From positions 39,246,001-39,310,000 of the forward strand of contig OZ286477.1 of the NCBI GenBank assembly GCA_965644265.1: DNA of 64,000 nucleotides, read 5' to 3'. The notes below the pieces were generated by a model. It was not told the origin of the DNA, did not search any database, and saw only the letters and a program-made list of their open reading frames with translations. Of this stretch, positions 10,928 to 63,125 are shown one piece after another. The DNA is from Glycera tridactyla. Lineage: Eukaryota. The translations under genes and the position numbers were made by a program. Within the stretch, counting starts at the first letter, position 1; each line of letters opens with the position of its first letter.

Positions 10928-11046
10928 CGAGAGCATCGTCTGGTTCCATCATATCATCATTCTCGTACATTGTAGCAACCCGAGATGGCGGTCTGATCAT
11001 CCAAGTTGGCTGCTTCGGAGTTTCATAGATATTTGGTGATTTACCT
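10928..11046 (-). CDS. Cytoplasmic-tail exon (119 nt, phase 2 to 1), GKSPNIYETPKQPTWMIRPPSRVATMYENDDMMEPDDAL
   Basis: Acceptor ctgctttcttcccttaacag, donor CTC G|gtaagt. Open in the phase left by the TM exon. Confidence 0.82.
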
Positions 11047-11706
11047 CTGTTAAGGGAAGAAAGCAGCAGAACAAAGTCAGTAATTTCCAGTTCGAAACAA
11101 TTGAATTTTTACTATATGAAAACGATTGTAGTCATACTCTAAGCAATTTGGAGTGCTCTATTCATGAACGATGATTGGTATCATGCTAGAATGCCATATC
11201 ACACCTTCTCATTCACTCACACATGCGCTCAAACCACACATCAACTCATTTGGGTTAGGATGATGGTTGGACAGTAAACGGTGACGTGTGTCTTTTTGAT
11301 TTAATTTGATTTAATACTTCATTTTAATCCGTCATGTTGTAGAGTATACAAATATACACTGCCTCCAGTCAGCTAATGTCTCACTGACGTTTCGCATTTC
11401 ATTCCTTTCTCACGAGTTTTCCCTGAGTGAGAAGAAATCTTCACCTGCATGCTTTCGTATGAAAGTGAGTGAACTACAATTTGCGAAGGTACATCATGCA
11501 GTCAATGGTCCAAAATATTGGGATTGATTTATTAATCAGAATCACACGGGTCTTCAGAATTCAACGGCAGACCTGTCAAAAAGGGATTGTGCCTGTTGGA
11601 TTCTCTGCCCTTTGTTAACTCGACGACTGACCAGAAAGTGCACTTGTCCTAGAATGGTTTCAGAGCTGGAATGGCTAGAATGGTTTCTGAGCTAAAATGG
11701 TTCATG

Positions 11707-11707
11707 G

Positions 11708-11771
<64 letters not shown>
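11707..11771. repeat. (CT)n(CA)n compound microsatellite
   Basis: Seen directly. Confidence 0.97.
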
Positions 11772-11773
<2 letters not shown>

Positions 11774-12894
11774 CCATCCAACGTTTCACTGCAAAACTGC
11801 CCCATATCAGGCTCAGAGGAAGCTTGACCAATATAAGTAGAAACTGTCATATTGGACCCACTCCAAAAATAATAGGCCAACACACCCACACAAAAGACCG
11901 CATCCCAGAAGATTCAGATAAATATTCACAGTACTAGGGGAGTGGATGGTGGTCAATAGATGGTGCGTATTTGGACTTATATCTGACACGAAATATTTCC
12001 ATATAATTTTCACATTATGACTGGGTAAAAGTTTAATTTGAAGTAAGATCATCCCGATTGGTATCAATTACAAACCGGAGGTCATTTGTATCATTATTCC
12101 ACAAAAAACGCACTCTCTCTTCACCAATTCTACGTGGTTTATAAGATTAGGTCAAGTGTTCCATGTCGAGGAATTAACAGCCCTTCAGTAGCGAGTTAGG
12201 TACAGACACTCCAGTTCTCAGCTGAGCAGCACTGTTTACAGCAGTGGCATAAAGGTAGTGATGGTGATTGTAGAGTGCTCAGGCCATGCAGATAATTCTG
12301 TGTCCATGGTTGTATACTCCCCAGGGAGATGAGAAAGGTACAAGTTTGAACGGGCCTGCCATGGAATGTATTTCTAAAGTCGGTTGAACATACCAGGGAC
12401 TAAATTCTTGATTTTGCAGCAAATTTTCATTGCATAGTTGATCTCAGCTACACTATTATTTGACTCAATATAAAATCAGAATAGAGTCTTTCTTGCAAGA
12501 ATCTTGTATATGGTTTCTGTAACATTTTGAGAAAATGTATTAAGAGATGGCATTGTTGAAGGAAGTGTTTGTCAGTAAATTTTATCTCGTCGAAATTACC
12601 TCGAGTTTATAATGCTATTACTAACACAATGAATGTATTATACTAAGGATATACCGGACAAGGTTGCAGCATTTTGCAACTAAATGTATTTTTCGTTTTA
12701 GATTAAAGTTTATTACAATTACACCGAACTTTAAACCATCACACTTACATTTATATTTAGTAACGAGCTCAAATGCGGGTTCCGTCTAAGGCCATCGGGG
12801 TAACTACTATTTGTTAATGAGTAATCTAAAAGACATTCATATGTACTTGATGGATGAGTCTGATTATATCAACACCTTCACCTGCATGCGATCA

Positions 12895-12923
12895 TTGATT
12901 GATTGATTGATTGATTGATTGAT

Positions 12924-12985
<62 letters not shown>
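12895..12985. repeat. (TGAT)n microsatellite
   Basis: Seen directly; shorter runs occur near 14578, 25421 and 50226. Confidence 0.97.
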
Positions 12986-12987
<2 letters not shown>

Positions 12988-14199
12988 GTCAGCATGCAGT
13001 CTGATTGGAGCAAAAGATTTACCTTTTGCAGGATGGGCATGCACGAACATGAATGGGGAGGGAATTGTGCTAAGTTGCTGCGCATTTGGATGTTGGATTT
13101 CCAGTACCTTCCCGGGAATACATCACGGGTATATTTGCACACTACATTGAGATTTCCTAGGAGATAGTGATTGGTCATTAGGATCACGTGGTTGATTTGT
13201 CAGGGCTCTACGGGTTTATTATCCATCCACATGCGAGAAACTACCACCCCCATACCCCACTTGTGAGAGGATATGATCAAAACTAGATGTGGCCAATGTG
13301 CAAAAGCAGGCAGCATTGACAGTGACATGCATTCATACACACCGGACTACTATCCGTCGGCCTTGTGACCTGTAGTGAAATAAACCCTCATATAGCAATT
13401 CAAAGAACAGTTGAACAAGTAGGACAAGTCAATAATAGTGAGAAAATCTCCGGCGGGAAATTAGAAAGTGGCTGCTTGAGAAAGGTGGCTGCTCAGTACA
13501 GTGGCTGCTTAGAACAGCTTAGACTGTATATATATCGAAAAAAACTGCCTCGCCTCAACTGATACAATAAGGAGAAGCAGCAATTCCCTTCAAGAATGGC
13601 CAAAAGATAACTCTAGTCACTGATTGTCTAGCTGATTGTGATCCCAAATTTTATGATTTTTTGACATAAATCTGTTGTCTATTTCAGATATCAATAGCAA
13701 ATTTTATTTAGTATGACAGCGTTATATGCGTATGTCATGGGTTGCTTACACATTTTTTCAGCAAATATAGAGTATCGATAGAGCATATAGAGTATCGATA
13801 GAGCATGATGATTTTTCAACATACTGGTCCTGATACATACTGGTATGGTTTGATACCAAGTCAAGAAAATCATGTTTCATTTCATCAAAAGTTTGTTGGT
13901 AATCTGATGATATTTTCTCTCCACCAGTATTCGGAGACAATCTGTGGTTTCTTTCTAGTTGGACTGTGACCTAATGGTAGCCATTGGTTCATCAATCATA
14001 TAGTATAATGAGTTTTCATGCGAATGGAGTATGTTATCTATTTAATGGATAGTGCCTCTTGTGAATTCGATACCCAATCACTGAGAGGACTATCGCTCTT
14101 TCAGGAAAGGATGGTTGCTAATTGGTCCTCTGATACGTACAATACCCATTTCAAGTTGATATAGAAAATCACACAGTGCCGAAAAATCTAATGAAGTGA

Positions 14200-41149: not shown

Positions 41150-41248
41150 CCGACAAACATTCGCAAATACCACTGGCACCACAGTAGCTGTTGTTGACTC
41201 CAGACAGACACCAAGTATTGTTCGTACAGACAGTGACATCTACCCGAA
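41150..41248 (-). CDS. Small exon (99 nt, phase 1-1), first five Cys of an EB-like module
   Basis: Acceptor ttctgcatttcag|TT CGG GTA; encodes VRVDVTVCTNNTWCLSGVNNSYCGASGICECLS; donor TCG G|gtaagt. It joins in frame to GYKAEGDGTEC of the next exon. Confidence 0.88.
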
Positions 41249-44705: not shown

Positions 44706-45728
44706 CTGTTTCACAAGCACTCTTGTTGGCCGCTATTTGGTACCCGCTGACGCAGGTACAGGTGTCGTTGAAGCAGATGCTGTTCGCGAATGCAATGGCG
44801 CATTCATATGTGGAGATGCATGCATCCTCTCCCAATACCCGTAACCGACAGTCTCCATTCTCCTCCACATGTGTGGGTATACACGAACATGTACTGTTAG
44901 TAGAACATGTTCCCGTTATAAAGGAACAGTTAGTACAAATACTTCCGATTATATTCACTGTACAGTCCGAATTCGATGCACAGGAATCACCTAACTCCCT
45001 CTCGACGCACTCTCCCACACCCGTTTGTTTATAACCGGATGCACATTGGCAAGTATCATTCAGACAAGTACTATTTCCGATTGCTGTATTGCAGTCACTT
45101 TGAGTGTTGCAAATATCGCCTATTTCACGTAAGTTACACACTGAACCCGCAGTGTTATTGATGTATCCCATTAAACAGTCGCATACACCATTAGAACAAT
45201 GACTATTATTAATAGCGGCGCTGCAATCATTATCAATATGGCAATTACTATCACCTATCTGTCGTAATGTACATGTTGAATTATCATTTGTGACGTAAAA
45301 CCCGTCGTCACAGGAACAGGTCCCGTTGACACATAGAGAACTTGATACCGCATCGGCGCACTCAGAACTACTATAACAAGTGTCACCTATCGTTAATAGC
45401 ACGCACTGCGAGCCGTCCGTGTCTGTTTGGTACCCGGATTGACATTGGCATATGTTGTCAACGCATTCGCTATTTGGAATGGCATCGGCGCAGTCGGTGG
45501 TGAGCGCGCATGTCGAATTATCCCCGATAAAGCGGAGGGTGCACGACGAATTGCCATCGTTGGCATAGAAGCCACTATTGCAGTAGCATGCGCCCGAAAT
45601 ACAGGAACTGTTGGCAATTGCCGATGTACAGTCAATCTCCGTGGAACAATTCCCGATTCCGATCTGACGTAATAAGCATACGTCACCCTCGGACGTTGCC
45701 TGGTAACCAAGGACGCAAACACACGTGC
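44706..45728 (-). CDS. Exon (1,023 nt, phase 1-1), about 7-8 EB-like modules
   Basis: The frame of ORF 44701..45402 stays open upstream to acceptor ttttcttgtttcag|GC ACG TGT (GTCVCVLGYQ...), which completes the half module ending the previous exon. Donor GAA ACA G|gttagt at 44706. Confidence 0.92.
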
Positions 45729-46240
45729 CTGAAACAAGAAAACAAACTAGCGCATCATTTGTTGTTCATCACGAAAAAATAGCATTACTTAACTTAATAC
45801 ATATATCTAATGGAATATGAATACAATTGCTGTGTCTACCACGGGGAAGGACATAACCGCCGGACAATAGACAAAACTATTCGTGAGCCAATGAAAGATC
45901 AACCCTATCTGAATTATTTCGAAATTGACAAATTTGCTGTGGATGACTCCATAAAAAAATTGGCAATAATGTATTTCAAGATAAACCTGATAACTCTGCA
46001 GGCCATATACGCTATATTAGCTTGAAATAGTTTCATTGAATCCGGAACGATAGGTATGAAAATAATATTCATGGGTCTCACACATAGTTGTGGCACAACT
46101 GGCCACTTCAAATGCTGGACCACAATCGTCTTAGGCGATGTCAGGCTGCTGACTTGGGTAACATCTCATGTCGTTAATGCAAATCATGTCGATTTCAGAA
46201 TTGTATCCAACACCTGCCATGATATTGAAGCTTGAAGAAC

Positions 46241-46833: not shown

Positions 46834-47096
46834 TGACAGTCTTTTCAAATACTGAATATTTGTCAAGTTGGATTTTCAGCCGCGGTATCACTGCAATTGC
46901 ATTTATGACATGAGATGATCTAGACGATGATTTTATTGTCACAGACTTCATTTGGTACTCTAGTGTGTACGGTGTAATTCGAACACATGATCGAACATTG
47001 TGTCTGATGCTAATTTACACCTTTGACACCTTCGACTTGTTGACTATGCTCGATCTTCACAAGCTCCGTTTCATGTCCAGTATATACTGCAGGTGT

Positions 47097-47272
47097 ATGC
47101 TGCTGCGAGCATATATAAGTTCCTGATAAAGTGAGTCAAGTGGTAGGACTCTATTTTTTGTCAACCTAGAGAAGCCCAGTAGATTATGTTGCTGCAAGCA
47201 TATATAAGTTCCTGATAAAGTGAGTCAGGTGGTAGGACTCTATTTTTCGTCAACCAGGAGAAGTCCACTAGA
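47097..47272. repeat. Tandem duplication of about 90 bp
   Basis: gcatatataagttcctgataaagtgagtca.gtggtaggactctatttt occurs twice. Confidence 0.85.
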
Positions 47273-50200
47273 TTGGGGTAGTGTACTGTTATACTGATGT
47301 TGCACAGAATGACGGAACAAAATAAAGAAATGACCTATACTACTATTTGTCTGTTCATTCTTCAGCTGTCCAGGTCCCTGATATATTTACAGAATGGGGT
47401 AAACACCGGTACACCATATAATACATGGTGCATTTCACAGTTTGTTTGTCAATGCAAACTATGAATTATCTGAGTGTACGAGGTTAGCATTGGCTCTACC
47501 CATCACCTATACATCTCTACCTGTGCATTATAATTTGCAGACATGAAATGGTACTTATGTTTGTGATATCAGATGTTGAGTGTTATTTGTGCAGTGAAGT
47601 GATCTTTTCAAATTGGAAGGTGGGTTATCCAATCGTACAGAGGGTGATGACTCTTCAATGTCGATGTATATAGTCCGATATGCACTCCAATCAATTATGA
47701 AATTAACTGTTGAAAGATGAACTTCTATTTATTGCGTACGTTGTGACATTATCAACAGAAATATCACAGTTTCATGGGATAATTACGACTCCTCCTGACA
47801 TCTCAAAAAGTAACGGAAATCATAGTTCTCAGCTGCTGAAATTGTAGGAAATTCTTGAATGGTATGGTTGGAAGGATTCTGTAGAACCAGAACCCTTCAC
47901 GTTTATCTCCCGAAACTCAAATACCACCAATGTGTTTTCTATCTCACTTCAATATATTGTTTTTACTTTTGAATCAGCTGGAAGTACCACTGCTGTCTAT
48001 CGACAAAGAATGAGTATACCCATGCACTGCAAACAATAAATGTGTCTCAAGGTGACAACAAAACATGAAAAGAAAACAAATACAATGAATCAGGAGTATG
48101 AATTAAACCAAAACCCGAACCATGTGCTCGTTCAATAACACATGCAACTGAAACCATAACCAACTTAACTCAAACTGGAAGTGTGTGAATGAGTAGAAAA
48201 TAAACGGTGCATGGGAGTCGTTCGTAGCAGCTGATGAGCAAACAGTGAGCACGCAGTGAAAGACAATGAGTGATAGTTAGTGGAATCTGATGTCACTCCA
48301 AGATGTACCGTCAGCTGCTGTACCAGGTGTGATGACCAAATGCAGTGATGGAGTCAGTTGAGGTGGCTTCCTGTACACGTGAGCACGTGAATGTGGTGAA
48401 ATCGCACGCAGGTGGGGGCTACCCACCTCAGGTGATGGAAATATAACATATACTCTCTTGTATCCCTCATGTTTCCACATTCAAGTGGTATGTTATGAAA
48501 AATATAACATATGCTGTCTTGTATCCCTCATGTTTCCACATGCAAGAGCGGTATATTATCCCATCAGTGTATCTCATGTATATCCATAGTATAGAGTATA
48601 TGAATAGTGTATGTATATCCAAGTGGTATTATATGTGTAATTCCTGGCAACCATCTGGCTGGTGTTTGATGGGAATCGATACAGGTTTGTATTGATTCCA
48701 AACACATGAATGTGTATGTGAAATCTTCACATTAACTCAATGGAATTGGAACTTCCACACGTGCCAATTTGCTGTGCATAGCTGTATCGATGAGATGTAT
48801 ATGGGTATTGAGTTATTCAGTGTGGAAGCTTCAGGGATGATAATGCCATTCTGCTAAATCATCTGAGGTGAGGCAACGTACAATTTTGATTATATTTTCA
48901 TTTCTCATGTCTATTCATTTCCCATCAATATCCGGGCTACATGCCTGGACAATTTTGCTGCTCATGAAGTCATGTTGAATTGTCAGAGCGATATGCTCGT
49001 TTAACAATCTCTTACAGAAATATTATCAGCGCTGCTCCAATCACCAACTTCCATATGTTTACATTATCTTCTAGTTTTCACAGGAAATATCAGTTTAGCA
49101 AATCAGTCAATTGATTCATATACTCTAACCCTTATGAACAAGATTCTATATCAATGCCATGAGATGAACAAAAGTTCAAGTTTTTTTATTCACAAGGATA
49201 GAAATCCTCTCCTCTTCTGAAAGTGTGACTTCATGTTTCTCTGTGACGGAGATATAGATTCAGATATGAACGAGGTACATCATCCCGGGGACTTCCACTT
49301 TCATTGTTTGGCCTTGCAGATTAGTCCTGGTGAATAACATAGTTGGTATCTCAAAATCCGGTATGGCATATAGATTGTTCGATCGTGGAAATACACATTG
49401 TGCATATCGTCATATACCACAGGAGCTGCAATTTGCAGCACTTGTACCTGGTTCAAATCCAATGATGCATGTTCCTACACGATTCGTGTTGATTCATAAT
49501 ATCACTTTGCACTACCATGCCTCCATTCCTTGAAGTATCCCATGGTGTTATGAAATTCCACACTCGTTCTAATGTTATTAACTGCATCCTGACAGCTTAC
49601 ATCGACAAATGTCTTTTGTTTTTTTTTGTTCCAGGAAAGCATTGTTGACATCTCCATTTTGGGGTATAGAGAAGAATAGCCTTGCGCCCACATTCCTCAT
49701 GTATTTTCTGCCTGCTTGCTAGCATAGGCTGGGGATTCATTTTACATATGGTCACCGCTGAGGCAGGCATACATGTCACTATCAACTGTACAGTAACTGT
49801 TTCTGCAGACATCTGCTCGATCTCTGTTTGCTTGCTGCTCCATCTTGCAGCCAGTTTCTGCAGTAAGCATGGTGCATTGTCAAATAAGGAATTCAGTATT
49901 GCAACTCCCAATGAGGAATGCACTGAGTTGTGTAGACATGTCCCACACATATTGATGCCTTATTTATGACCGCATCCTCACAGTATGAAGGCACAAGTCA
50001 TTGTGGGGTTTTTCCCATGACCAAAATCTGGTGCCGTGAGTTCCGGGGAGGGCTCCATCACTTATATTTCAAAATATGCACCCAATTAGCTGTACACATT
50101 TTGTGCGGATGATATGGGTCTTGGTGGTATTGATTTTCCTGTTGTGAGAGTACCCATAGCCGGAGGGTCACATCATGGACTAGAACCTCCGTGCCATTAC

Positions 50201-51221
50201 AATAATGTCCGACTCTGTGTAGTAATGATTGATTGATCGATTGATCGATTGATTGACTGTTCCGATTGATCACTGTCCAGTACCACTGGCAGAGCCTTCC
50301 CAGTGATGTCGTTAGCTATTCCTGGGTGACAGGTCTATTCTAGGCAAGGCACATCCCCCTGCCTTCAATTGAGATCACCCCCCTCTCTTGCGCTTGCATA
50401 CGCATGTATTATTATGAGATAGGGTGTCAGTGCGGATGATTTGTGGTCACTTATTATAGCGCCATGGCTATCTTAGGACCATTGTTCGCAGGGGACACCA
50501 CTCGAGCGATCTGTGTATATATGTACTTGTATGATTCAGCATATGGTCATACTCTCTGCACCAGTTTGATACCCTCATCAATCATGTCACAGTCAATGGG
50601 TGTACAGTCACAGGTCAGTTCAGATATTAGATTACCTATATTTATAATGGTATACATGATGTTAAACGTTTTTTCCATCACCACATGTGCACGTGTTAGT
50701 GGTGCAGTTGTTAGTATTTGCTGTTTGGTTATCTACATCTCTTATGTAGTGTGATTACTATCTCACATAGATGGAGTTGGCTGTGGTGAAGCTAATATCA
50801 ATCTATACATCCACAATTCCCATTCACGCCAGAATATTGATTGGTGCTTGCTACACCATAACAGCCTAAGTTACTTGACTATCCATTGTCAGATTGGTTA
50901 CTCGGCCATGTGTGAACACCAGGCCAGCTTCCAGAGTGTTATGTGACGCCATGCAGTGGGCATGGGAGGAGATCACTTAACTTGACACTCCTCGTTCTTC
51001 ACCCTGGGTTGTAAGTAGAACCCACTTTTGGTTGTGAGTTTAACCCACTTCTGATCTTTCATATGAAATGTGGAGTGTTAGAAGTACATTGGGATAGATA
51101 CAAGTGTCGATGATCCATATTGTGTTACAGGATGAGATGCTTAGCCATAGCCTTTTCACTACCACCGTTAATAGTGCATGGATGATATGACCTATTCGTC
51201 ATTATATAGAAATGCTTTCAC

Positions 51222-54200
51222 CTGCATCCACTCGATATCCACTTGAGAAGCATTCACTGCCATCAATTGCTGAGTTGCAGTCACTGTCCACCATGCAGCC
51301 ATCTCCAATCTGCCGTAAACTGCAGGTCGTGTTGCCATCAGTAGCATAAAATCCATCATCACACTGACATGTATCATTGTTGCAGGAACTATTCACAACA
51401 GCGTCATGACAATCTTCATCTGTGGTACATGTTGGATCTCCTATATGACGTAAATCACAGGAACTGTTGTCATGGCTCACTTGATATCCACTGATGCATG
51501 CACATGTACCACCAAGGCAAATACTGTTGGTTACAGCATCATAGCAATCTGTATCACTCATACAGTTGGGGTCACCTATCATTCTGAGGGTGCAAATCGT
51601 ATTGCCCTGTTTAGCATAGAATCCAGAGTCGCAGGTACAAGTGTTATTGACACAAGAACTGTTAGCAACAGCACTAAAGCAGTCGATATCTGTCAAGCAT
51701 GTTGCACTGACTATCATTCTGGGACTGCAGCTAACGTAATCATCTGAAGCCTGGTATGTTATGGTGCACTGGCAAAACCCATCATCTGAGCACTCACTAT
51801 TGGGTATGGCTGAGTTGCAGTCCATATTTATCAAACATTGGTCTCCAATCATCCTCAATGTACATGTCATATTATCATCAGTGGCATGAAATCCCACATC
51901 ACATCCACATGTCCCATTATAGCAGGAACTATTGGAAACTGCATCAAAACAGTCCTGGTCATTCAAACAGGTTTCATCTCCAATTTTCCTCAAGATGCAA
52001 CTAGAGTTGTCATCTGATTCTTTGAATCCGGACAAGCAAGTACATTCTCCATCCTGACATTGTGACTGGGCAACTGCTTGAGAACACTCGTTGTCAGTAT
52101 CACAACTGTTTCCTATCTGTCTCATGATACACGTTGTGTTGTCCTCGGTGGGATAAAACCCAGCATCACACAGACATGTGTTATTCACGCATGAGCTGTT
52201 CATCACAGCTTTAGAACAGTCAGTCCAATTATGACATGTTTGATCACCAATTTTACGAAGATTGCATTCAGTATTGTCATCATTGACATGGTAACCAGTC
52301 ATGCATTCACATATGCCAAATTGGTTGCATTCACTGTAAGTGACTGCAGAACTACAATCAGCATTGTTAACACAACCAGAAACACCGATGGTGTACTTGG
52401 CACATGTAGTATTAGCCTCGGCTGCATAGAATCCGGAGTTGCACAGGCATGTGCCATTGTTGCAGGAGGAATTTGAAATGGCATCAAAGCAATCCATGTC
52501 TGTATTGCAGGTGTCATCCCCAATCTGCCGCAGAATGCAAGTCATGTTGATCCAATTGACATTGAAGCCAGATTTGCAAAGGCAAATTCCTTCCCCTGAG
52601 CAGATGGTATGATTGATTGCAGCATGACAATCAATATCCTCCAGACAATTCGAGTCTCCGATTACTCTCATTGTACATGTTGTACTATTTCCATCAGAGG
52701 GATAAAACCCATCCATGCAAGAGCAAGTCCCATTCACACAGAAGCTATCCAGAACAGCATCTGCACATTCAGCATCAATGCTGCATAAGTCGCCAAGTTT
52801 CCGCAATTCACAAGATGTCAAATTATTGCTGACTTGGTAACCTGATTGACAAACACACTCACCTAATATACACTTGGAGTTGGCTACGGCTTCGTTACAA
52901 TCGGCATCTGTGGCACAGTTACTATCGGAAATTTTGCGCAATGTGCAGGTCGTATTAGATGAGGTTGCATAGAATCCTAAGTCGCACTCACATGTACCAT
53001 TCACACAGGAACTGTTCCTCACTGCATCAGAACAATCCTGATTCACAGAACAAGTAGTGTCACCTATCTCTCTGAGAATACAATCATCTGCATTGTCATT
53101 GACTTGATAACCACTGTTGCAGACACACATGCCTGCAGTGGAGCATTCACTATTAGGAACTGCAGAATTACAGTTGGGATCACTTTCACAGTTATTATCT
53201 CCGATTTTGTACAATGTACATGATGTGTTAGCATCACTGGCATAGAAGCCACTGTCACAGAGACAGGTTTGGTTGACACATGAGCTATTGAGGACAGCAT
53301 CCATACAATCTGAATTAATAATGCAGCTATCATCACCAATTTTACGTAGTATGCAGGTAGTGTTGTTCTGATCGACTTGATGGCCGCTCATGCAGATACA
53401 CTCGAAGTCAGTGCATTGACTATTCGAAACAGCATCATCGCAGTCAGAGTCAGTCACACAATTATTGTCACCAATCTTTCGCAGTGTACATGTTGTGTTT
53501 TCATCAGTAACATAGAATCCACTATCACAGGCACATGTACCATTAACACATGAGCTATTACTCACTGCATCTGAGCAATCAGTAATGTATTCACATGTTT
53601 GATCACCGATGAGTCTCAGGGTGCACGTTGTATTGTCTTCATTCACTTGGTATCCACTCAGACAGGTACAAATCCCAGATTGTGAGCATGCACTCTCAGC
53701 TACTGCTGATACACAATCTTCATCCATCATACAGGTATCTCCAATCATCCGAACAATGCATGTGGTGTTATCGTCACTGCTATAGAATCCATCATCGCAT
53801 ACACATGTATTGTTGATACATGAACTGTTACTAACTGCACTTGAACAGTCAGTGTTGCTGATGCATGTTGAATCACCTATCTGTCTCAGTGTACATGTCG
53901 TGTTTGAGCTACCGACCAAAAAGCCACTCTGACAGGCACATACACCTGGAGACTGACATTCACTGAAACTGACAGCACTACTACAATCTGAATCAATCTC
54001 ACAGTTAGTATCACCAATCTTGTGTGAAGTACACACTGTATTGTTATTGGTACTATAAAATCCACTGTCACACAAACATGTGTTGTTAGTACATGAGCTG
54101 TTAAGCACTGCATCAGCACAGTCTGTGTCCATAGAACATGTATTATCCCCAATCTTCCGTGAAATGCATGTGGTATTGTCATCACTGACTTGATATCCAC

Positions 54201-57200
54201 TCAAACAAGAACAAATGTTGTCAGAAGAACATTCACTATCTAGTACAGCAGCACTGCAATCAATGTCTGTCACACAGTTGTCATCACCGACTTTCCGCAG
54301 AGTACAGGAAGTATTTTCATTTGTTGTATAGAATCCATCATTGCAAACACAAGTATCATTTTGACAAGAACTGTCGTTCACTGCATCATAACAGTCACTG
54401 TTTATAGAGCATGTTGCATCTCCGATCTTTCTCTGGATACACTCTGTGTTGTTATTGTATACTTGATATCCACTCACACAGGTGCAGCTATTATTCATGT
54501 TACAGAAACTATTCTGAACAGCATCACTGCAATCTGAGTTGAGGACACAGTTAGAATCACCAATTTGTCTTAATGTGCAGGATGTATTGCCATCTGTAGC
54601 AAAGAATCCGGAATCACAGTCGCACGTCCCTTCTACACAAGAACTGTTGGTCACTGCATCAAAACAGTCACTATTGGTGATGCATGTGTCGTCCCCTATC
54701 TGCCTTCTAATACAGTTTGTGTTGTTATCATGAACTTGAAATCCCGATATGCACTGACATGTACCATTATCAGAACATTCACTATCTTCAACAGCTGAAC
54801 TGCAGTCGGGATCTGTCAAGCAATTTGCACCACCTATTTGCCTCAATAAGCATGTATCATTGTCACTATTGGTGTAGAATCCAGTATCACACATGCATGT
54901 GTTGTTAATACATGAGCTATTCATGACAGCATCATAACAGTCTGCAGCTGTATCACATGTTGAATCACCTATTTTACGCAGAATACAGCTAGTATTATCC
55001 TGAGATACCTGATAGCCAGATATACAAACACATTGATCATCCAGACATTCAGAATTAGGAACTGCTGAACTGCAATCATCATCCAACATGCAGCTCTGGT
55101 CACCGATCATCCTCAAGGTACATGAAGTATTTCCATCAGTGACATAGAATCCAGTGTCACACAAGCATGTACCATTTGCGCAGGAACTGTTACTTATTGC
55201 ATCTGAACAATCTGACTTGATTGCACACGTTTCATCACCAATTTGTCGTAGAATGCATTCCGTATTTGTTGAAACCACTTGATATCCACTTAGACACAAA
55301 CAAATTCCGTCAATGCCACATTCACTGTTTCTAACTGCATCCTCACAATCCAGATCACTGAGACAGTTTGAATCACCAATTTGTCGCAATGTGCAAACCG
55401 TATTGTTATTGGTTGGGTAGGAGCCGGAGTCACACAAACAGGTGTTATTCAAGCAAGAACTATTAGTAATTGCATCGAAACAGTCACTAGGCTCACTGCA
55501 AGTAGCATCTCCTATGAGTCGACGTGTACATGTGGTGTTGTCAAAGCTCACTTGAAATCCAGATATACATTCACACACTCCAAAGGTAGAACACACACTG
55601 TTATCAACAGCAGCATTGCAGTCTTCATTATTATCACAGTTGGCATCACCAATCACCCTATGGGTGCAGGTTGTATTGTCATTTGTGCTGTAAAATCCAC
55701 TATCACACAAACATGTGTTGTTTGTACATGAGCTGTTAAACACTGCATCAGCACAGTCCTGGTCGATAGAGCATGTATCATCCCCAATCTTGCGTAGAGT
55801 GCATGTGGTATTGTCATCAGTAACTTGATATCCACTCAAACAGGAACAAATGTTGTCAGAAGAACATTCACTATCTAGTACAGCAGCACTGCAATCAATG
55901 TCTGTCACACAGTTGTTGTCACCGATTTTCCGCAGAGTACAGGAAGTATTTTCATTTGTTGTATAGAATCCATCATTGCAAACACAAGTATCATTTTGAC
56001 AAGAACTGTCGTTCACTGCATCATAACAGTCACTGTCTATAGAGCATGTTGCATCTCCGATCTTTCTCTGGATACACTCTGTGTTGTTATTGTATACTTG
56101 ATATCCACTCACACAGGTGCAGCTATTATTCATGTTACAGAAACTATTCTGAACAGCATCACTGCAATCTGAGTTGAGGACACAGTTAGAATCACCAATT
56201 TGTCTTAATGTGCAGGATGTATTGCCATCTGTAGCAAAGAATCCGGAATCACAGTCGCACGTCCCTTCTACACAAGAACTGTTGCCAACTGCATTAAAAC
56301 AGTCACTATTGGTGATGCATGATTCGTCCCCTATCTGCCTTCTAATACAGTTTGTGTTGTTATCATGAACTTGAAATCCCGATATGCACTGACAGGTACC
56401 ATTATCAGAACATTCACTATCTTCAACAGCTGAACTGCAGTCGGGATCTGTCAAGCAATTTGCATCACCTATTTGCCTCAATAAGCATGTATCATTGTCA
56501 CTATTGGTGTAGAATCCAGTATCACACATGCATGTGTTGTTCATACATGAGCTATTCATGACAGCATCATAACAGTCTGCGGCTGTATCACATGTTGAAT
56601 CTCCTATTTTACGCAGAATACAGCTAATATTATCCTGAGATACCTGATAGCCAGATATACAAACACATTGATCATCCAGACATTCAGAATTAGGAACTGC
56701 TGAACTGCAATCATCATTCAACATGCAGTTCTGGTCACCGATCATCCTCAAGGTACATGAAGTATTTCCATCAGTGACATAGAATCCAGTGTCACACAAG
56801 CATGTACCATTTACACAGGAACTGTTACTTATTGCATCTGAACAGTCACGATTGATTGTACATGTATCATCACCAATTTGCCGTAAGATGCATTCCGTAT
56901 TTGTTGAATCCACTTGGAATCCACTTAGACACGAACAATTTCCATCAGTGCTGCATTCACTGTTTTTAACAGCATCATCACAATCTCCATCACTGAGACA
57001 GTTCGAATCACCAATCTGCCGCAATGTGCAAACCGTATTGTTATTGGTTGGGTAGAAGCCGGAGTCACACAAACAGGTGTTATTCAAGCAAGAACTATTA
57101 GTAATTGCATCAAAACAGTCACTAGGCTCACTGCAAGTAGCATCTCCTATCAGTCGACGTGTGCAGGTGGTGTTGTCAAAGCTCACTTGAAATCCAGATA

Positions 57201-60200
57201 GACATTCACACACTCCAAGGGTAGAACACACACTGTTATCAACAGCAGCATTGCAGTCTTCATCATTATCACAGTTTGCATCACCAATCACCCGAAGGGT
57301 GCATTCTGTATTCTCAGCAGTTGGAAAGAATCCAGTATCACAAACACAAGTACCATTATAGCATGAGCTGTTAGAAACAGCATCTGAACAGTCTGTAGTT
57401 ATATCACAGGTAGGATCCCCAATTTTCCGCAAGTAACAGGAAGTTAAATCATTGGTTGCCTGGTAACCAGAATGGCATGAGCACTCACCTGCCTTGCAGT
57501 AAGAGTTGGGTATCGCAGCAGCACAGTCTTCATTTATTGCACAATTTGAATCACCAATCTTGCGTAGAGTACAAGTTGTGTTTGCAGCTGTTGCATAGAA
57601 TCCGATATCACAGTCACAAGTGCTCTCAACGCAGGAGCTGTTTCCAACGGCATCAAAGCAGTCTTGATCTTCTGAACAGGTGGTATCTCCAATTTTCCTC
57701 AAAACACATCCATCTGCATTTTCATTCACCTGATATCCACTTGTGCAGGTGCAAGTCCCATTTTCTGTGCATTCACTATTAGAGACTGCAGAACTACAAT
57801 CTGAATTTGTCTCACAATTATCATCTCCGATTTTGAATAAAGTACATGTGGTGTTCAAATCACTGGCATAGAATCCCGAGTCACATGTGCATGTGTTGTT
57901 CACACAAGAGCTATTCATAACAGCATTTGTGCAATCTGTATTGACTGTGCATGTGCTGTCGCCTATCCTTCTCAAAATGCAACTGGTATTATCAGCACTA
58001 ACTTGATATCCACTCAGGCACGTACATTCTCCAGAAGCCGAACACTCACTGTTAGAAACAGCATCATCACAGTCTGAATCTAGTACACAATTACTATCAC
58101 CGATTTTCCTCAGTGTACATGTAGTGTTAGCAGCTGTGACATAAAATCCACTGTCACAAGTACAAGTGCTATTAACACATGAACTATTACTCACAGCATC
58201 AGAGCAATCTAGGTCAGAATCACATGTTGAGTCACCGATTTGTCTTAAAGTACATGTAGTATTATCCGAACTGACTTGATATCCACTGGAACAAGTACAT
58301 ATTCCCGAGATGGTGCATTCACTATTTGCAACAGCTGATGTGCAATCACTGTCAGTAAGGCAGTTATCATCCCCTATTTGTCTTAGGATACAAGTTGCAT
58401 TGTCGATACTGTTGTAGAATCCACTATCACAAGCACAAGTATCATTGATACATGAACTGTTGGTGACTGCATCAAAACAATCACTATTGCTGGAACATGT
58501 TGCATCCCCTATTTTACGTAAGGTACATGTTGTATTGTCCGCGCTAACTTGATATCCACTGATACAAGCACATGTCCCGCCGTCTGTACATTCACTGTTA
58601 TCAACAGCAATGGCACAATCCGAGTTGGTCTCACAGTTGCTGTCTCCAATAACTCGCAACACACAGGTGGTGTTCCCATAAGCACTATAGAATCCAGTGT
58701 CACAGACACAGGTTGAGTTCACACATGAGCTATTGGACACAGCATCGCTGCAGTCAGACAGCGAGGTACATGTACTGTCACCAATCTTACGAAGAACACA
58801 ACTGGTGTTGTCATTATTTACTTGATATCCACTGATGCAGGTGCATTTACCTTCCTCTGTGCATTCACTATTACTGACAGCATTACTGCAATCTGAATCA
58901 CTCGCACAGTTGCTGTCTCCAATCTTCCTCAATGTACAGGTTGTGTTGGCATCAGTTGCATAGAATCCACTGTCACATGAACATGTGTTATTTACACATG
59001 AACTATTGGTCACTGCATCAAAACAGTCTCTATTACTCTCACATGTAGAATCACCAATCTGTCTTAGAATACATGTGGTGTTATCAGGGCTAACCTGAAA
59101 TCCACTTTGACAGATGCACGTCCCAGAGTCTGAACATTCACTGTTTGCAACTGCGGATGTGCAGTCGCTGTCAACCAGACAGTTGGCATCACCGATTATC
59201 CTGAGTATACAGGTGGTTTTATCGAGGCTGTTGTAGAATCCACTATCACAAGCACATGTGTCATTGATACATGAACTGTTGGTGACTGCATTGAAACAGT
59301 CACTACTGCTGGAACATGTTGCATCCCCTATTTTACGTAAAGTACATGTTGTATTATCAGTGCTCACTTGATATCCACTGATGCAAGCACATGTCCCATC
59401 TTCTGTACATTCACTGTTATCAACAGCAATGGCACAATCCGAGTTGGTCTCACAGTTGCTGTCTCCAATAACTCGCAACACACAGGTGGTGTTCCCATAA
59501 GCACTATAGAAACCAGTGTCACAGACACAGGTTGAGTTCACACATGAGCTATTGGACACAGCATCGCTGCAGTCAGACAGCGAGGTACATGTACTGTCAC
59601 CAATCTTACGAAGAACACAACTGGTGTTGTCATTATTTACTTGATATCCACTGATGCAGGTGCATTCACCTTCCTCTGTGCATTCACTATTACTGACAGC
59701 ATTACTGCAATCTGAATCACTCGCACAGTTGCTGTCTCCAATCTTCCTCAATGTACAGGTTGTGTTGGCATCAGTTGCATAGAATCCACTGTCACATGAA
59801 CATGTGTTATTTACACATGAACTATTGGTCACTGCATCATAACAGTCTCTGTCACTCTCACATGTAGAATCACCAATTTGTCTCAGAATACAGGTGGTGT
59901 TATCAGGGCTAACCTGAAATCCACTTTGACAGATGCACGTCCCAGAGTCTGAACATTCACTGTTCGCAACTGCGGATGTGCAGTCACTGTCAACCAGACA
60001 GTTGGCATCACCGATTATCCTGAGTATACAGGTGGTGTTATCAGGGCTGTTGTAGAATCCACTATCACAAGCACATGTGTAATTGATACATGAACTGTTT
60101 GTGACTGCATTGAAACAGTCACTATCACTGGAACATGTTGCATCCCCTATTTTACGTAAAGTACATGTCGTATTGTCATTGCTCACTTGGTAGCCACTCA

Positions 60201-63125
60201 CACATGAGCATGTGCCAGTTGATGAGCACTCACTGTTAGCAACTGCATCTGAGCAGTCAGTGTCAGATAAACAGTTGGAATCACCAATCATACGCAATGT
60301 ACATGTACTATTCCCATTAGTGCTATAAAAGCCACTATCACATACACACGTTGAGTTAACACACGAACTATTAGTTATAGCATCACTGCAGTCGGTGTTG
60401 ACACTGCATGATGAGTCACCAATCTTGCGTAGTTCACACTTACTGTTATCATTGCTCACTTGGAATCCGCTCATACATACACATGTACCATCTGCTGAGC
60501 ACTCACTATCCGATACAGCATCACTGCAATCGCTATCTTCATCACAATTATCATCACCGATAACGCGGAGCGTGCATGTTGTATTATCCGCTGTGGCGTA
60601 GAATCCACTATCACATGCACAAGTAGCATTTATACAGGAACTATTAGCAACTGCACTTGAACAATCCGAGTCCAGCGCACATGTGGAGTCCCCTATCTTC
60701 CGTAAAACGCAGGTTGTATTATCCTCACTCACTTGAAATCCACTCAGACAGGCACAAGTGCCTGATGACGTACATTCACTATTAGCAACGGCGTTGTGAC
60801 AATCACTACTGACGTTACAATTACTATCTCCAATCACACGTAGAGTACATTGAGAGTTCCCTCCTGTGGCGTAAAATCCACTATTACATTGGCATGTGTT
60901 ATTTACACAGGAACTATTCATAACCGCGTCATAACAATCGCTATTAATAGCACATGTTGTATCTCCAATTTGACGGAGGATACATGTGGTGTTATCCAAA
61001 CTGACTTGATATCCACTGATACATGCGCAACTTCCATTTTCACTGCATTCACTGTTAGCAACGGCATCTTGGCAATCTGAGGTGCTTTCACAGTTATCAT
61101 CTCCGATTTTTCTCAGTGTACATGAGGTGTTTGCTTCAGTGACATAGAACCCACTGTCGCATGCGCAGGTGTTATTCACACAGGAACTGTTCATCACGGC
61201 GTCAGAACAATCAGCATCCATGTTACATGATGCATCTCCTATCTTCCTCAGGTCGCATGTCGTATTATCATCACTAACTTGGTATCCACTCACGCACGCG
61301 CAGACTCCACCATCACTGCATTCACTGTTAGCAACCGCATCTTCACAGTCCGAGTCCATTTCACAGTTAGCATCCCCGATCTCACGGAGTGTACACACGG
61401 AGTTGTCATCAGTAGCATAAAATCCGCTATCACATGCACAGGTGTTATTGACACAGGAGCTATTTATCACTGCGTCTGAACAATCAGTCAGTACGCCACA
61501 AGTGGCATCTCCGATTTTTCGTAACGTACATGTGGTGTTATCCTCACTAACTTGATATCCACTCAAACACGCACAGGTCTCACCATCTGTGCATTCACTG
61601 TTTGCCACAGCCGAGCTACAATCCAAATTGGATTGACAATTGGATGATATTGTCCGAAGGATACATTCTGTGTTATCATCACTGGGGTAGAATCCAGTGA
61701 TACAGAGGCATGTGTTATTGCTACAAGAACTGTTACCAACGGCGTCGGAACAGTCTAAGGTCGTATTACATGTGCTGTCGCCGATTTGACGTAGATTACA
61801 TGACGTAAAATCGTCGCTGACGTGATACCCAGAGAGACAGACACACTCACCTGAGCTACAGTGCGAGTTGGCGACCGCCTCGTTACAGTCCTCATCCTGT
61901 TCACAGTTACTATCACCAATTTGACGTAACGTACACGTCGTGTTGTCATTGGTGGCGTAGAAACCTACGTCACAGGCGCACGTCGCGTTCACACAAGAAC
62001 TATTAACCACTGCATTGGAACAGTCCGTGTTCGAATCACATGTGTCATCGCCGATTTTCCGTAACGTACATGTAGTGTTATCCTCTGATACCTGGTATCC
62101 AGACACGCAGGTACATACGCCTCCCGTACATTCGCTGTTGGCGACTGCATCGCTACAATCGCTCGTCACGTTACAGTTTTCATCGCCAATTTGGCGTAAG
62201 GTGCAAGCGAGACCGGCGTTGGTTGAATAATAGCCAGAAATACAGACGCAAGTGCCATTGGCGCATTGACTCGAGACAACAGCGTCAGAGCATTCTTCAC
62301 TCGACTCACATTGCGTTGTTCCCATGGTTACAAGCACACAGTAGGTGCGATCATCACTAACAAGGTAACCATGGTTACATGCACATGTTGAATTTGTACA
62401 GTTGCTATTGGCAACTGCATCTGAGCAATCTGATTCTGATGAGCATGCATCTTCGATTGTACGAAGTAAACATTCCGTTAGATTGGTGTTTACTTTGAAC
62501 CCGCTTTCGCACTCACAGATATTGTTCACACATGTACTGTTGACAACGGCGGCACTGCAATCGACATCCGTTGTGCATGTTGCATCACCAATTTTACGTA
62601 ATGTGCACATTGTACCATTTTCGTTGCTATGGTAACCGTCATCACAGACGCAAGAGAAGGCCTCGCAAATACTGTTAGTAACAGCCGTGGAGCATTCTAA
62701 GTCATAATGGCATCCATCCCCTATCGTTCGCAGGACACATGTGGTGTTATCTTCATTCGCGAAATAGCCGACGTTGCATGTGCACACTCCTTCCGCGCAG
62801 TTGCTATTGGCAACCGCGTCACCACAATCACTATCCACCACGCACGTGTCGTCACCAATACGGCGTAATGTACACGTCTTGACGTCATCCTGGTTATATC
62901 CGGAGAGGCACTCGCACGTCGTGACGTTACAGTAGCTGTTGCTAACGCCGAATTCACACTGAGTGTCATTTTGGCATGTCTGTCCGAGGTAGCGAGGGTC
63001 GCATGTGGTTCCCGTGCCGTCGCTGATGTAGAGAAACTGACACTCGCACGAACCGTCCGTACATTCGCTGTACGTGACGGCATCGTTACAGTCGTCGTAC
63101 GTCGTACACGAATCACCGATCACCC
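51222..63125 (-). CDS. Giant exon (11,904 nt, phase 1-1) of a Cys-rich membrane protein; about 87 six-Cys EB-like modules alternating 45 and 46 aa
   Basis: 4003-aa ORF of LR(K/Q)IGDxxCxxxxDCxxAVxNSxCxxxxCxCxSG(F/Y)xxxxxNxxC repeats. Acceptor ttttctttgcctttcag|GG GTG ATC at 63125; donor GAT GCA G|gtgaaa at 51222 (a weaker in-frame donor lies at 51243). The ORF residues outside these sites are not repeat-like. Confidence 0.93.
54060..57305 (-). repeat. Intra-exonic tandem duplication, period 1,635 bp (12 modules), 2 copies
   Basis: ttgatatccactcaaaca at 54190 and 55825, and gcatcaccaatcaccc near 55643 and 57278, give the same offset. Long stretches are nearly identical, including third codon positions. 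Boundaries approximate. Confidence 0.88.
58400..60200 (-). repeat. Intra-exonic tandem duplication, period 819 bp (6 modules), about 2.2 copies
   Basis: actatcacaagcaca at 58423, 59242 and 60061; near-identical blocks in between. Boundaries approximate. Confidence 0.9.

What the first reader, a model, noticed from the sequence alone, without database searches (positions are those of the whole stretch)
10928..63125. Hidden giant (at least about 7,000 aa) Cys-repeat type-I membrane protein assembled from separate ORFs and sub-ORF exons
Seen in sequence: four separate ORFs in the track plus five exons that are not called as in-frame ORFs join through canonical GT-AG sites with matching phases into one frame of about 6,985 codons. 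Order: about 100 six-Cys modules, about 70-80 four-Cys modules, three six-Cys modules, stalk, TM helix (LAVIGIATVCMIALIAGFIYYKYKH), cytoplasmic tail. The modules are rich in Asp/Asn and in N-x-S/T sequons (NSS, NNT, NTT). Established: the six-Cys spacing resembles the EB module, known mainly from nematode Cys-rich proteins. Inference: a very long, disulfide-stabilised, heavily glycosylated surface rod, such as a glycocalyx, adhesion, gamete-recognition or mechanosensing molecule. I do not recognise this architecture from any named gene.
Basis: partly seen in the sequence, partly recalled or inferred. Interest (0 to 1): 0.85.

Follow-up and report, generated by a model that had tools for sequence, protein, structure and literature searches.

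The report
Giant EB/DUF7107 repeat membrane protein gene
The window holds almost all of one real animal gene whose nine exons encode a cell-surface protein of at least 6,985 amino acids: about 104 EGF-like (EB) modules and about 80 small four-cysteine modules on a single membrane anchor. It is an uncharacterised variant of a poorly known invertebrate family, and there is no RNA proof of the splicing yet.

Summary
Observation confirmed to the codon. Nine minus-strand exons (63125-51222, 45728-44706, 41248-41150, 40133-39405, 35246-28317, 20416-20377, 19438-19404, 18616-18541, 11046-10928) join through GT-AG sites with matching phases into 20,955 nt = 6,985 codons without a stop.

Content:
- 101 EB modules (Pfam PF01683).
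- About 78 four-Cys 27-aa modules (Pfam DUF7107), plus a few on mucin-like linkers.
- A three-module EB cassette next to the membrane, a short stalk, a Cys-loop ending in PW, one TM helix and a basic/acidic tail.

The N gap (26069-27063) lies inside the 7.9-kb intron between the 6.9-kb exon and the first mini-exon. No reading frame crosses it.

No RNA run was listed, so splicing is unproven by reads. Two other genomes nevertheless show the same order: cassette exon, 40-nt mini-exon, 35-nt Cys-loop/PW segment (followed by the TM helix in the one contig long enough). That supports the least secure joins. The tail exon and both gene ends remain inferred.

Function is unknown. The best reading is a long, disulfide-locked, N-glycosylated surface filament or tether. 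The scan had already found a paralogous 77-module EB receptor elsewhere in this genome. This gene differs in its giant exons and its DUF7107 block. Verdict: new variant of a known kind, moderate interest.

The parts
51222..63125 (-). Exon A, 11,904 nt, phase 1-1. It holds 88 EB modules in an alternating two-type (a/b) 91-aa super-repeat. An alternative weaker donor at 51243 would remove 7 codons.
44706..45728 (-). Exon B, 1,023 nt, phase 1-1, 7 EB modules. The A/B junction falls inside a module, between Cys4 and Cys5.
41150..41248 (-). Exon C, 99 nt, phase 1-1. It encodes the first two thirds of one EB module, which exon D completes.
39405..40133 (-). Exon D, 729 nt, phase 1-1, 5 EB modules.
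28317..35246 (-). Exon E, 6,930 nt, phase 1-1. It holds about 78 four-Cys DUF7107 modules (C-x5-C-x5-C-x4-C, 27-aa period), then a few such modules on Ser/Thr-rich linkers, then three EB modules. The donor is weak (TCTG|GTATAC).
28324..28806 (-). Membrane-proximal three-module EB cassette at the end of exon E. Relatives P0002 and P0036 conserve it.
28255..28257 (-). In-frame stop reached if the exon E donor is not used. An AATAAA lies 220 nt further on, at 28030-28035.
26069..27063 (.). Assembly gap (N), inside the intron between exon E and S1.
20377..20416 (-). Mini-exon S1, 40 nt, phase 1-2. It encodes a 12-residue stalk (TSDPNSEASTAA). Relatives L001 and L002 have an exon of the same length and phases.
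19404..19438 (-). Mini-exon S2, 35 nt, phase 2-1. It encodes the juxtamembrane Cys-loop CEGFIGCAPWV. The motif C-x-G-[FL]-[VI]-x-C-x-P-W occurs once in the six-frame translation of the window and is shared with L001 and L002.
18541..18616 (-). TM exon, 76 nt, phase 1-2. It encodes the helix LAVIGIATVCMIALIAGFIYY followed by KYKH(R). Acceptor and donor are both strong.
10928..11046 (-). Cytoplasmic tail exon, 119 nt, phase 2-1. It carries the Tyr motifs NIYETP and MYEND and an acidic end. It ends at a donor, so at least one more exon is expected and was not found.

Best explanation
The window carries all but the two ends of one protein-coding gene of an invertebrate. Earlier notes of this scan call the animal probably an annelid; I did not test that.

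The product is a single-pass type-I membrane protein of at least 6,985 residues. From outside to inside it has:
1. About 101 EB (EGF-like, six-Cys) modules in an alternating two-type array.
2. About 78 DUF7107 four-Cys mini-modules joined by 9-residue Pro/Thr linkers.
3. A few such modules on mucin-like linkers.
4. A conserved three-module EB cassette.
5. A 12-residue stalk and a Cys-loop ending in Pro-Trp at the membrane.
6. One TM helix, a basic stop-transfer and a short tail with two tyrosine motifs and an acidic end.

Shown here: the exons, the frame, the domain families, purifying selection, sequon enrichment at fixed module positions, and conservation of the membrane-proximal exon structure in other genomes.

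Inferred:
- About 950 cysteines form roughly 470 intramodule disulfides, so the ectodomain is a protease-resistant, semi-rigid, N-glycan-coated filament. It would be a few tenths of a micrometre long, taking about 2.5-3 nm per EGF-like module from what is known of tandem EGF rods.
- The filament projects from an apical cell surface. It works as a structural tether or spacer between the membrane and an overlying matrix (cuticle, glycocalyx or mucus), in the manner of Drosophila Dumpy, C. elegans MUA-3/MUP-4 or transmembrane mucins.
- The tail could couple it to adaptors or the cytoskeleton.
For: Gene model:
- Nine AG/GT-flanked exons with matching phases give 6,985 stop-free codons.
- The A/B and C/D junctions complete single EB modules.
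- No rival phase-compatible Cys-containing exon was found in any intron.

Real coding:
- dN/dS is about 0.14 between EB modules.
- pN is well below pS, with saturated third positions, in DUF7107 modules.

Domains:
- Pfam finds EB and DUF7107 far above the gathering scores over the whole length, and no other family above its curated cut-off apart from cEGF on the C-terminal half of the EB modules.
- Fungal, bacterial and metagenomic DUF7107 proteins have the same 5-5-4 Cys spacing.

Fold:
- The AF2 model of three EB modules has pLDDT 96.6, and its best PDB neighbours are tandem EGF arrays.
- The AF2 model of four DUF7107 modules has pLDDT 80 and shows a turn plus beta-hairpin in each module.

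Membrane anchoring:
- In L001 (a Logan contig) a homologous cassette exon is followed by a 40-nt mini-exon. Next comes an exon that starts CRGLVQCRPW, runs into a TM helix and ends in phase 2 after FFYKK.
- In L002 (GCA_022702875.1) the cassette exon is followed by a 40-nt exon and a 35-nt exon encoding CAGFVSCHPWA.
- Lengths and phases are identical to S1 and S2 here.
- The independently annotated Elysia marginata protein P0001 aligns across last EB module, stalk, APW, TM and basic stretch.
- L003 shows a 973-aa EB array in one exon, 38% identical to exon A, directly before the cassette exon.

Glycosylation: 231 sequons against 122 expected, at three fixed positions in the EB module.

Topology: the extracellular-type modules lie N-terminal of the only strongly hydrophobic segment, and K/R/H residues follow it.
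Against: - No RNA evidence exists. No run was listed, so no junction has been seen in a transcript.
- The exon E donor is weak (score -1.3), and an in-frame stop plus an AATAAA follow it. A secreted form may therefore exist.
- The exon E acceptor is weak (score 2.0). The D-to-E join has no comparative support, because the relatives found lack a DUF7107 block between EB array and cassette.
- The tail exon rests only on splice-site quality, phase and composition.
- The signal peptide and the last exon or exons are missing.
- An exon hidden in the N gap cannot be excluded.
- Function is by analogy only. No ZP, SEA, vWA or other matrix-anchoring domain was found, and tissue and expression are unknown.
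Confidence: 0.7

Rival explanations
1. The gene ends at exon E. The weak donor at 28317 is not used, translation stops 20 codons later at 28257-28255, and the product is a secreted giant matrix or mucus protein. The TM and tail exons would then be used only in a minor isoform or not at all. A mixed version is also possible, in which splicing competes with polyadenylation to give both secreted and membrane forms.
For: - The donor TCTG|GTATAC scores -1.3 on a generic model.
- The in-frame stop lies 60 nt downstream and an AATAAA 220 nt after it.
- The next exon is 7.9 kb away, across a gap and a 2-kb minisatellite.
- No reads are available.
Against: - Relatives place an equally weak donor at the same point after the last Cys of the cassette. 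A 40-nt exon, the C-x-G-x3-C-x-P-W segment and (in L001) the TM helix follow it.
- S1 and S2 here have exactly those lengths, phases and motif. The motif occurs only once in the window.
- An AATAAA within 220 nt is expected by chance in roughly one case in seven at this base composition (my estimate).
Confidence: 0.12
2. There are two or more adjacent genes rather than one. An EB-array gene (exons A-D) and a separate DUF7107 gene (exon E plus anchor) would have been joined wrongly by the model.
For: - The exon E acceptor is the weakest (score 2.0).
- Relatives in L002-L004 go from EB array straight to the cassette without a DUF7107 block.
- An ATG lies 3 codons into exon E.
Against: - Exon D ends at a strong phase-1 GTAAGT donor with no stop, so it needs a downstream phase-1 exon. 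Exon E is the next exon and is phase-1 compatible.
- The start of exon E has no signal-peptide-like hydrophobic stretch.
- Both parts lie on the same strand with no intervening candidate exon.
- Exon E itself ends in EB modules of the same family.
Confidence: 0.08
3. The gene model is the same, but the protein works as a signalling adhesion or engulfment receptor of the Draper/CED-1/MEGF10 type (EGF-like array, TM, tyrosine-motif tail) rather than as a structural tether.
For: - The tail has two tyrosine motifs (NIYETP, MYEND) next to an acidic stretch.
- Relatives are auto-named draper-like or MEGF-like.
Against: - The visible tail has no NPxY or YxxL/I motif.
- The ectodomain is an order of magnitude longer than in those receptors.
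- The names are automatic. The EMI/NIM N-terminus cannot be checked because the 5' end lies outside the window.
Confidence: 0.1

Closest known systems
Elysia marginata 'multiple epidermal growth factor-like domains protein 6' (P0001, 3,748 aa; automatic name)
   Same: - A giant array of EB modules (Pfam PF01683), about 63 by my pattern count.
- A short stalk, Ala-Pro-Trp at the membrane edge, one TM helix, a basic stop-transfer and a cytoplasmic tail.
- It aligns with exon A (24% identity over 84% of the query, E 9e-38) and across the last module, stalk and TM.
   Different: - Half the size.
- No DUF7107 block.
- No Cys-loop before the PW.
- The tail is not alignable.
- Uncharacterised, and not a true MEGF6.
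Unannotated relatives in GCA_022702875.1 / GCA_022702835.1 (L002, L003) and in Logan contigs (L001, L004)
   Same: - EB array in a large single exon, 38% identical to exon A.
- A membrane-proximal EB cassette.
- A 40-nt stalk exon.
- A 35-nt C-x-G-x3-C-x-P-W segment, followed by the TM helix in L001.

   Different: - No DUF7107 array between EB array and cassette.
- The cassette is a separate exon with an extra module.
- In L001 the Cys-loop and the TM helix share one exon.
- The organisms are unknown to me and only fragments were seen.
Paralogue noted earlier by this scan (s1-352407: 77 EB modules, one per exon, TM, conserved tail)
   Same: Same genome, and the same kind of protein: a giant EB-repeat single-pass membrane protein.
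   Different: - That gene has one module per exon, whereas here 88 modules sit in one 11.9-kb exon and about 80 in one 6.9-kb exon.
- No DUF7107 block was reported there.
- I could not compare sequences.
Drosophila Dumpy (my knowledge; DPY module in PDB 1oig)
   Same: - A gigantic membrane-anchored apical-matrix protein built from hundreds of small disulfide modules (EGF alternating with the mini-module DPY).
- It serves as a tension-bearing tether between epidermis and cuticle, the functional analogy I favour.
- There are weak sub-threshold hits of the four-Cys module to Dumpy_DPY.
   Different: - The DPY hits are below Pfam's cut-off (21 against 27 bits).
- No ZP domain and no PIGSFEAST-type repeats.
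- The modules here are EB and DUF7107, not EGF and DPY.
- This is not a family member.
Pfam DUF7107 (PF23416) proteins of Myxococcota, phages and fungi (for example Basidiobolus ranarum KAK9696768.1, P0003)
   Same: - The same C-x5-C-x5-C-x4-C module with an acidic D-x-D-C start, repeated in tandem.
- Scores far above the gathering threshold.
   Different: - Those proteins are short (about 100-1,500 aa) and have up to about a dozen modules, joined to OmpA, endonuclease or CWB2 domains.
- Here there are about 80 modules inside an animal surface protein together with EB modules.

Membership tests
EB module proteins (Pfam PF01683) | Match to the EB profile above the gathering score (24.3 bits) | tested here: met
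   Scores are 220-245 bits per 1,000 aa of exon A. Exons B and D score 91 and 86 bits, and the end of exon E 58 bits.
EB module proteins (Pfam PF01683) | Six-Cys pattern of an EGF-like module with a C-x-C pair | tested here: met
   A six-Cys pattern finds 102 modules with a 44-46-aa period. All Cys are invariant in a 21-row alignment. The AF2 model has pLDDT 96.6 and its nearest PDB folds are tandem EGF arrays.
DUF7107 (Pfam PF23416) | Match above the gathering score (24.6 bits), and the same Cys spacing as other members | tested here: met
   Scores are 267, 206 and 106 bits for three parts of exon E. The 5-5-4 spacing is identical in P0003, P0006 and P0008, which also score as DUF7107.
Dumpy-type apical matrix giants | DPY module (PF21164) above its threshold | tested here: not met
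   The best score is 21.3 bits against a cut-off of 27. The match to PDB 1oig has E 0.058.
Dumpy-type apical matrix giants | ZP domain before the TM helix | tested here: not met
   Pfam found no ZP hit in any coding piece I scanned. That covers exons A, B, D, E and the tail exon; exons C, S1, S2 and TM were too short to scan.
MEGF6 / canonical multi-EGF proteins | Canonical EGF or cbEGF Pfam domains and an EMI domain at the N-terminus | tested here: inconclusive
   Only partial cEGF (PF12662) hits fall on the C-terminal half of the EB modules, and no canonical EGF family is listed. The N-terminus lies outside the window.
Draper / CED-1 / MEGF10 engulfment receptors | NPxY and YxxL/I motifs in the tail; EMI/NIM at the N-terminus | tested here: not met
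   The visible 40-residue tail has NIYETP and MYEND but no NPxY or YxxL/I. The rest of the tail and the N-terminus are not visible.
MUA-3 / MUP-4 matrix receptors; transmembrane mucins | LDLa, vWA and SEA domains; long PTS mucin domain | tested here: not met
   Pfam found none of these. Only four short Ser/Thr-rich linkers occur near the end of exon E.
Lophotrochozoan giant EB-array single-pass proteins (unnamed; Elysia P0001, L001-L004) | EB array, then membrane-proximal cassette, short stalk, Pro-Trp at the membrane edge, TM helix and basic stretch | tested here: met

The most novel reading that the evidence does not exclude
This is a lophotrochozoan counterpart of Dumpy. It would be a membrane-anchored, sub-micrometre, tension-bearing fibre that ties epidermal cells to the cuticle or apical matrix. 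It would have been built independently from different bricks: EB modules plus about 80 copies of DUF7107, a mini-module seen here otherwise mainly in Myxococcota, phage and fungal proteins. A weak splice donor followed by a poly(A) signal may switch between shed and anchored forms.
Probability: 0.2. Interest if true: 0.7.

Novelty: new variant of a known kind. Interest (0 to 1): 0.5.

Why it matters
Giant Cys-repeat surface proteins are routinely broken or missed by gene prediction. This one appears in none of the protein collections I searched. If the model is right:
- It is among the largest single-pass membrane proteins of an invertebrate.
- It gives DUF7107, a domain of unknown function, a first animal context, with about 80 tandem copies beside EB modules.
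- It offers a contrast in gene architecture within one genome. Here 88 modules sit in one 11.9-kb exon, while a paralogue has one module per exon. That bears on how repeat arrays expand.
- The conserved 40-nt and 35-nt mini-exons and the Cys-loop/PW motif give a practical signature for finding and correctly annotating this family.

Its function is open. It is a candidate for the molecule that links annelid epidermis to its cuticle or glycocalyx.

Tried and rejected
- Reads: the look-up of sequencing runs on 28317-33000 listed no run, so read laying could not be used.
- The 438-aa ORF 21485-22801 as a 'stalk': rejected. It is produced by a 60-nt minisatellite (33.5 copies, 20594-22592), the other frames are full of stops, and it is not needed for the frame.
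- Direct join of exon E to the TM exon: in frame, but superseded once S1 and S2 were found and shown to be conserved.
- Phase 1-1 exon scan between exon E and the TM exon, and in all other introns: nothing credible.
- Search for exons after 10928: no convincing terminal exon.
- The search for homologous proteins with exon E (2,309 aa) and with 436 aa of the four-Cys array: no hit. With exon A: only Elysia P0001.
- Similarity of the tail to Elysia or mite tails, and tblastn of those tails on 1-20000: none.
- PDB sequence search: none for EB, and only weak Dkk4 and DPY matches for the four-Cys module.
- Foldseek and VIA-align for the DUF7107 model: no significant solved fold, only knottin-like or Dkk-like rows.
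- Literature: no paper mentions DUF7107, none of those listed for 'EB module' deals with giant EB-array proteins, and the relatives' accessions are not cited anywhere.
- Pfam on six other ORFs in the flanks and introns: nothing.
- One alignment (A1) of overlapping windows was mis-registered and was discarded.
Full report
**1. What is in the sequence**

The window has about 40% G+C and one N run, 26069-27063. On the minus strand there are stop-free stretches of 4,006 codons (63222-51205) and 2,354 codons (35319-28258). Shorter Cys-rich stretches lie at 45765-44704, 41420-41115 and 40161-39376. Their translations are regular arrays of Cys-rich modules.

**2. Exon chain**

I read the boundaries base by base and scored them with a simple splice model. 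This gives nine exons, all AG...GT:

| Exon | Coordinates | Phase |
|---|---|---|
| A | 63125-51222 | 1-1 |
| B | 45728-44706 | 1-1 |
| C | 41248-41150 | 1-1 |
| D | 40133-39405 | 1-1 |
| E | 35246-28317 | 1-1 |
| S1 | 20416-20377 (40 nt) | 1-2 |
| S2 | 19438-19404 (35 nt) | 2-1 |
| TM | 18616-18541 | 1-2 |
| tail | 11046-10928 | 2-1 |

Joined, they give 20,955 nt = 6,985 codons with no stop.

- The A/B and C/D junctions each fall inside one EB module and complete it. The B/C and D/E junctions keep normal inter-module spacing.
- Scans of every intron found no other phase-compatible Cys-containing exon.
- Two weak points are the exon E acceptor (score 2.0) and the exon E donor (TCTG|GTATAC, score -1.3).
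- Exon A has a second possible donor at 51243. It is weaker, but it would give a more typical four-residue loop and 7 fewer codons. I cannot decide between the two.

**3. The gap**

The N run lies inside the 7.9-kb intron between exon E (ends 28317) and S1 (starts 20416).

- No coding frame runs into it. The 27064 side is CATT-type simple sequence and the 26068 side is non-coding in appearance.
- The phases of exon E and S1 fit without anything from the gap.
- In two related genomes the homologous exons are separated by introns of only about 250-460 nt with no exon between them.
- A hidden exon cannot be formally excluded.

**4. Is it coding?**

- Between EB module pairs more than 70% identical in DNA, mean pN is 0.14 against pS 0.51, and the median dN/dS is 0.14.
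- Between four-Cys modules, pN is 0.31 against pS 0.63 for the closer pairs. Codon positions 1 and 2 are 54% identical and position 3 only 37%.
- All Cys columns are invariant in both module alignments.

This is an intact gene under purifying selection, not a pseudogene or a chance ORF.

**5. What the modules are**

EB modules:
- Pfam assigns exons A, B and D and the end of exon E to the EB module (PF01683), with E values from 3e-66 to 5e-74 per 1,000 residues.
- A six-Cys pattern finds 101 modules before exon E. Three more sit at the end of exon E by inspection of the translation, and Pfam gives one significant EB stretch there.
- In exon A two module types alternate as a 91-aa super-repeat.
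- A three-module AF2 model is very confident (pLDDT 96.6, pTM 0.81). Its best PDB neighbours are tandem EGF arrays such as EMR2, NELL, fibrillin, uromodulin and Pfs25, at weak E values.
- No solved structure matches by sequence.

Four-Cys modules:
- Exon E carries about 78 modules of C-x5-C-x5-C-x4-C with a 27-aa period.
- Pfam places them in DUF7107 (PF23416): 267 and 206 bits for two 1,000-aa pieces.
- Other DUF7107 proteins have the same spacing and the same acidic start. They include a Basidiobolus ranarum protein with an endonuclease domain, a CWB2 protein and metagenomic proteins.
- In the ESM Atlas the nearest clusters are Myxococcota, phage and fungal DUF7107 proteins. That collection is poor in animals, so this says little about the family's range.
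- A four-module AF2 model (pLDDT 80) shows a turn plus a beta-hairpin per module.
- No solved fold matches significantly. There are only Dkk-N and knottin-like rows, and the DPY module at E 0.058.

Overall, Pfam reports EB and DUF7107 throughout. The only other hit above a curated cut-off is cEGF on the C-terminal half of the EB modules.

**6. The membrane end, and independent support for the small exons**

With no RNA run available I looked for relatives of the last 250 residues of exon E in the 1.8-billion-protein library. The best hits were P0002 (E 3e-13) and, further down, P0036. Both share the peculiar three-module cassette. I fetched their contigs.

- **L001.** The cassette exon ends in phase 1 just after its last Cys, at an equally poor donor. 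A 40-nt exon follows. Then comes an exon that begins CRGLVQCRPW, continues into a TM helix, and ends in phase 2 after FFYKK.
- **L002.** The cassette exon ends in phase 1. It is followed by a 40-nt exon and, 3.3 kb on, a 35-nt exon encoding CAGFVSCHPWA in phase 2-1.
- **This window.** S1 (40 nt) and S2 (35 nt, CEGFIGCAPWV) have the same lengths and phases. The last base of S2 plus the TG of the TM exon gives the Leu that starts the helix. The motif C-x-G-[FLIV]2-x-C-x-P-W occurs exactly once in the six-frame translation of the window.
- **Elysia.** The independently annotated Elysia marginata protein P0001 was the only hit for exon A (E 9e-38). It aligns with my spliced C-terminus across last EB module, stalk, APW, TM and basic stretch.
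- **L003.** It shows that these relatives also carry large single-exon EB arrays: 973 aa, 38% identical to exon A, E 1e-148.

I take the chain E-S1-S2-TM as well supported (about 0.8).

The tail exon is less secure (about 0.65). It has the best acceptor, a strong donor and the only tail-like composition among 15 phase-compatible candidates. The TM exon of L001 also ends in phase 2. No relative covers the tail.

The tail exon ends at a donor, so at least one further exon is expected. I found none. Exon A starts in phase 1 in mid-array, so the signal peptide, and perhaps more modules, lie beyond 64000.

**7. Properties bearing on mechanism**

- The chain is 13.6% Cys (about 950 residues), 10.5% Asp and 8.2% Asn.
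- It has 231 N-x-S/T sequons against 122 +/- 9.5 in composition-matched shuffles. They are concentrated at three fixed EB positions: before Cys4, before the C-x-C pair, and before Cys6.
- The DUF7107 linkers are rich in Pro and Thr. Four Ser/Thr-rich linkers precede the cassette.
- The TM helix is the single most hydrophobic segment, and K-Y-K-H-R-G-K follows it. This fits an N-out, C-in topology.
- The visible tail has two Tyr motifs (NIYETP, MYEND) and an acidic end. Their use is speculative.

**8. Interpretation**

- **Shown:** one giant modular type-I membrane protein gene of the EB-array family, with an inserted DUF7107 array.
- **Inferred:** a disulfide-locked, glycan-coated filament of a few tenths of a micrometre that projects from a cell surface.

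I favour a structural tether or spacer role towards an apical matrix, by analogy with Dumpy, MUA-3/MUP-4 and transmembrane mucins (my knowledge). It is not a member of those families: the DPY score is below threshold, and there are no ZP, SEA, vWA or LDLa domains.

Rivals:
- A secreted form ending at the stop after exon E. The weak donor, the stop 60 nt on and the AATAAA at 28035-28030 also allow a splice-versus-polyadenylation switch.
- Two genes split at D/E.
- A Draper-like signalling receptor.

**9. Novelty**

- The species' own protein was found in none of the collections I searched.
- The nearest relatives carry only automatic names.
- I found no paper on DUF7107 or on giant EB arrays.
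- The kind itself is not new. Giant EB-array single-pass proteins exist in Elysia and in the unannotated contigs. This scan had already reported a 77-module paralogue on another piece of this genome. I could not compare sequences with it.
- New here: the size, the block of about 80 DUF7107 modules in an animal surface protein, and the packing of 88 and about 80 modules into two giant exons.

I class it as a new variant of a known kind.

**10. Limits**

- No transcript evidence.
- Both gene ends are missing.
- The gap is unread.
- Splice scores come from a generic model of mine.
- The organism is not identified by me. Earlier notes say probably annelid. My nearest named hits are molluscan and annelid.
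- Module counts could be affected by two recent intra-exon duplications of about 97% identity, where assembly errors are possible.

Noticed in passing
window 20594-22592: A 60-nt minisatellite of 33.5 copies, with 120- and 240-nt higher-order periods and strong GC skew. It lies in the intron 178 nt upstream of mini-exon S1. It creates the spurious 438-aa ORF 21485-22801 and a low-complexity Pfam DUF6812 hit.
   Followed up: partly
window 58422-60201 and 54072-57297: Two recent tandem segmental duplications inside exon A. One has an 819-nt unit (6 modules, about 97% identical) and the other a 1,635-nt unit (12 modules, about 96-97% identical). Both keep the frame. They could reflect copy-number variation or assembly collapse or expansion.
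   Followed up: partly
window 28030-28257: An in-frame stop (28257-28255) follows the weak exon E donor, and an AATAAA lies at 28035-28030. Together they are a possible alternative 3' end that would give a secreted isoform.
   Followed up: partly
window 27661-27932; 14737-15165; 24527-24653: Other intronic tandem repeats: 58/79-nt units next to the gap, a 74-nt unit of 5.8 copies, and a GAT/GAC-rich 21-39-nt array. Microsatellites are (CA)n at 11720-11771 and 20139-20200, (TC)n at 25085-25159 and (ATTG)n at 12894-12986.
   Followed up: no
L003 814-3735; L002 2158-6454; L001 972-2311: Public contigs from two unannotated assemblies (GCA_022702835.1, GCA_022702875.1) and two SRA runs carry homologous genes. 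These have a 973-aa single-exon EB array and the same cassette, 40-nt exon and 35-nt segment layout. L001 has a mucin-like Ser/Thr region upstream instead of a DUF7107 block.
   Followed up: partly
window 16755-16901: Another first-stage note reports a long hairpin here, inside the intron between the TM and tail exons. I did not examine it.
   Followed up: no
exon E modules compared with P0006 and P0008: The animal four-Cys modules closely resemble metagenomic and bacterial DUF7107 repeats (for example C-T-S-D-D-Q-C-P-G-D-L-V-C-V-D-G-E-C-V-F-P). Whether this reflects common descent, transfer or convergence of a very simple module is open.
   Followed up: no
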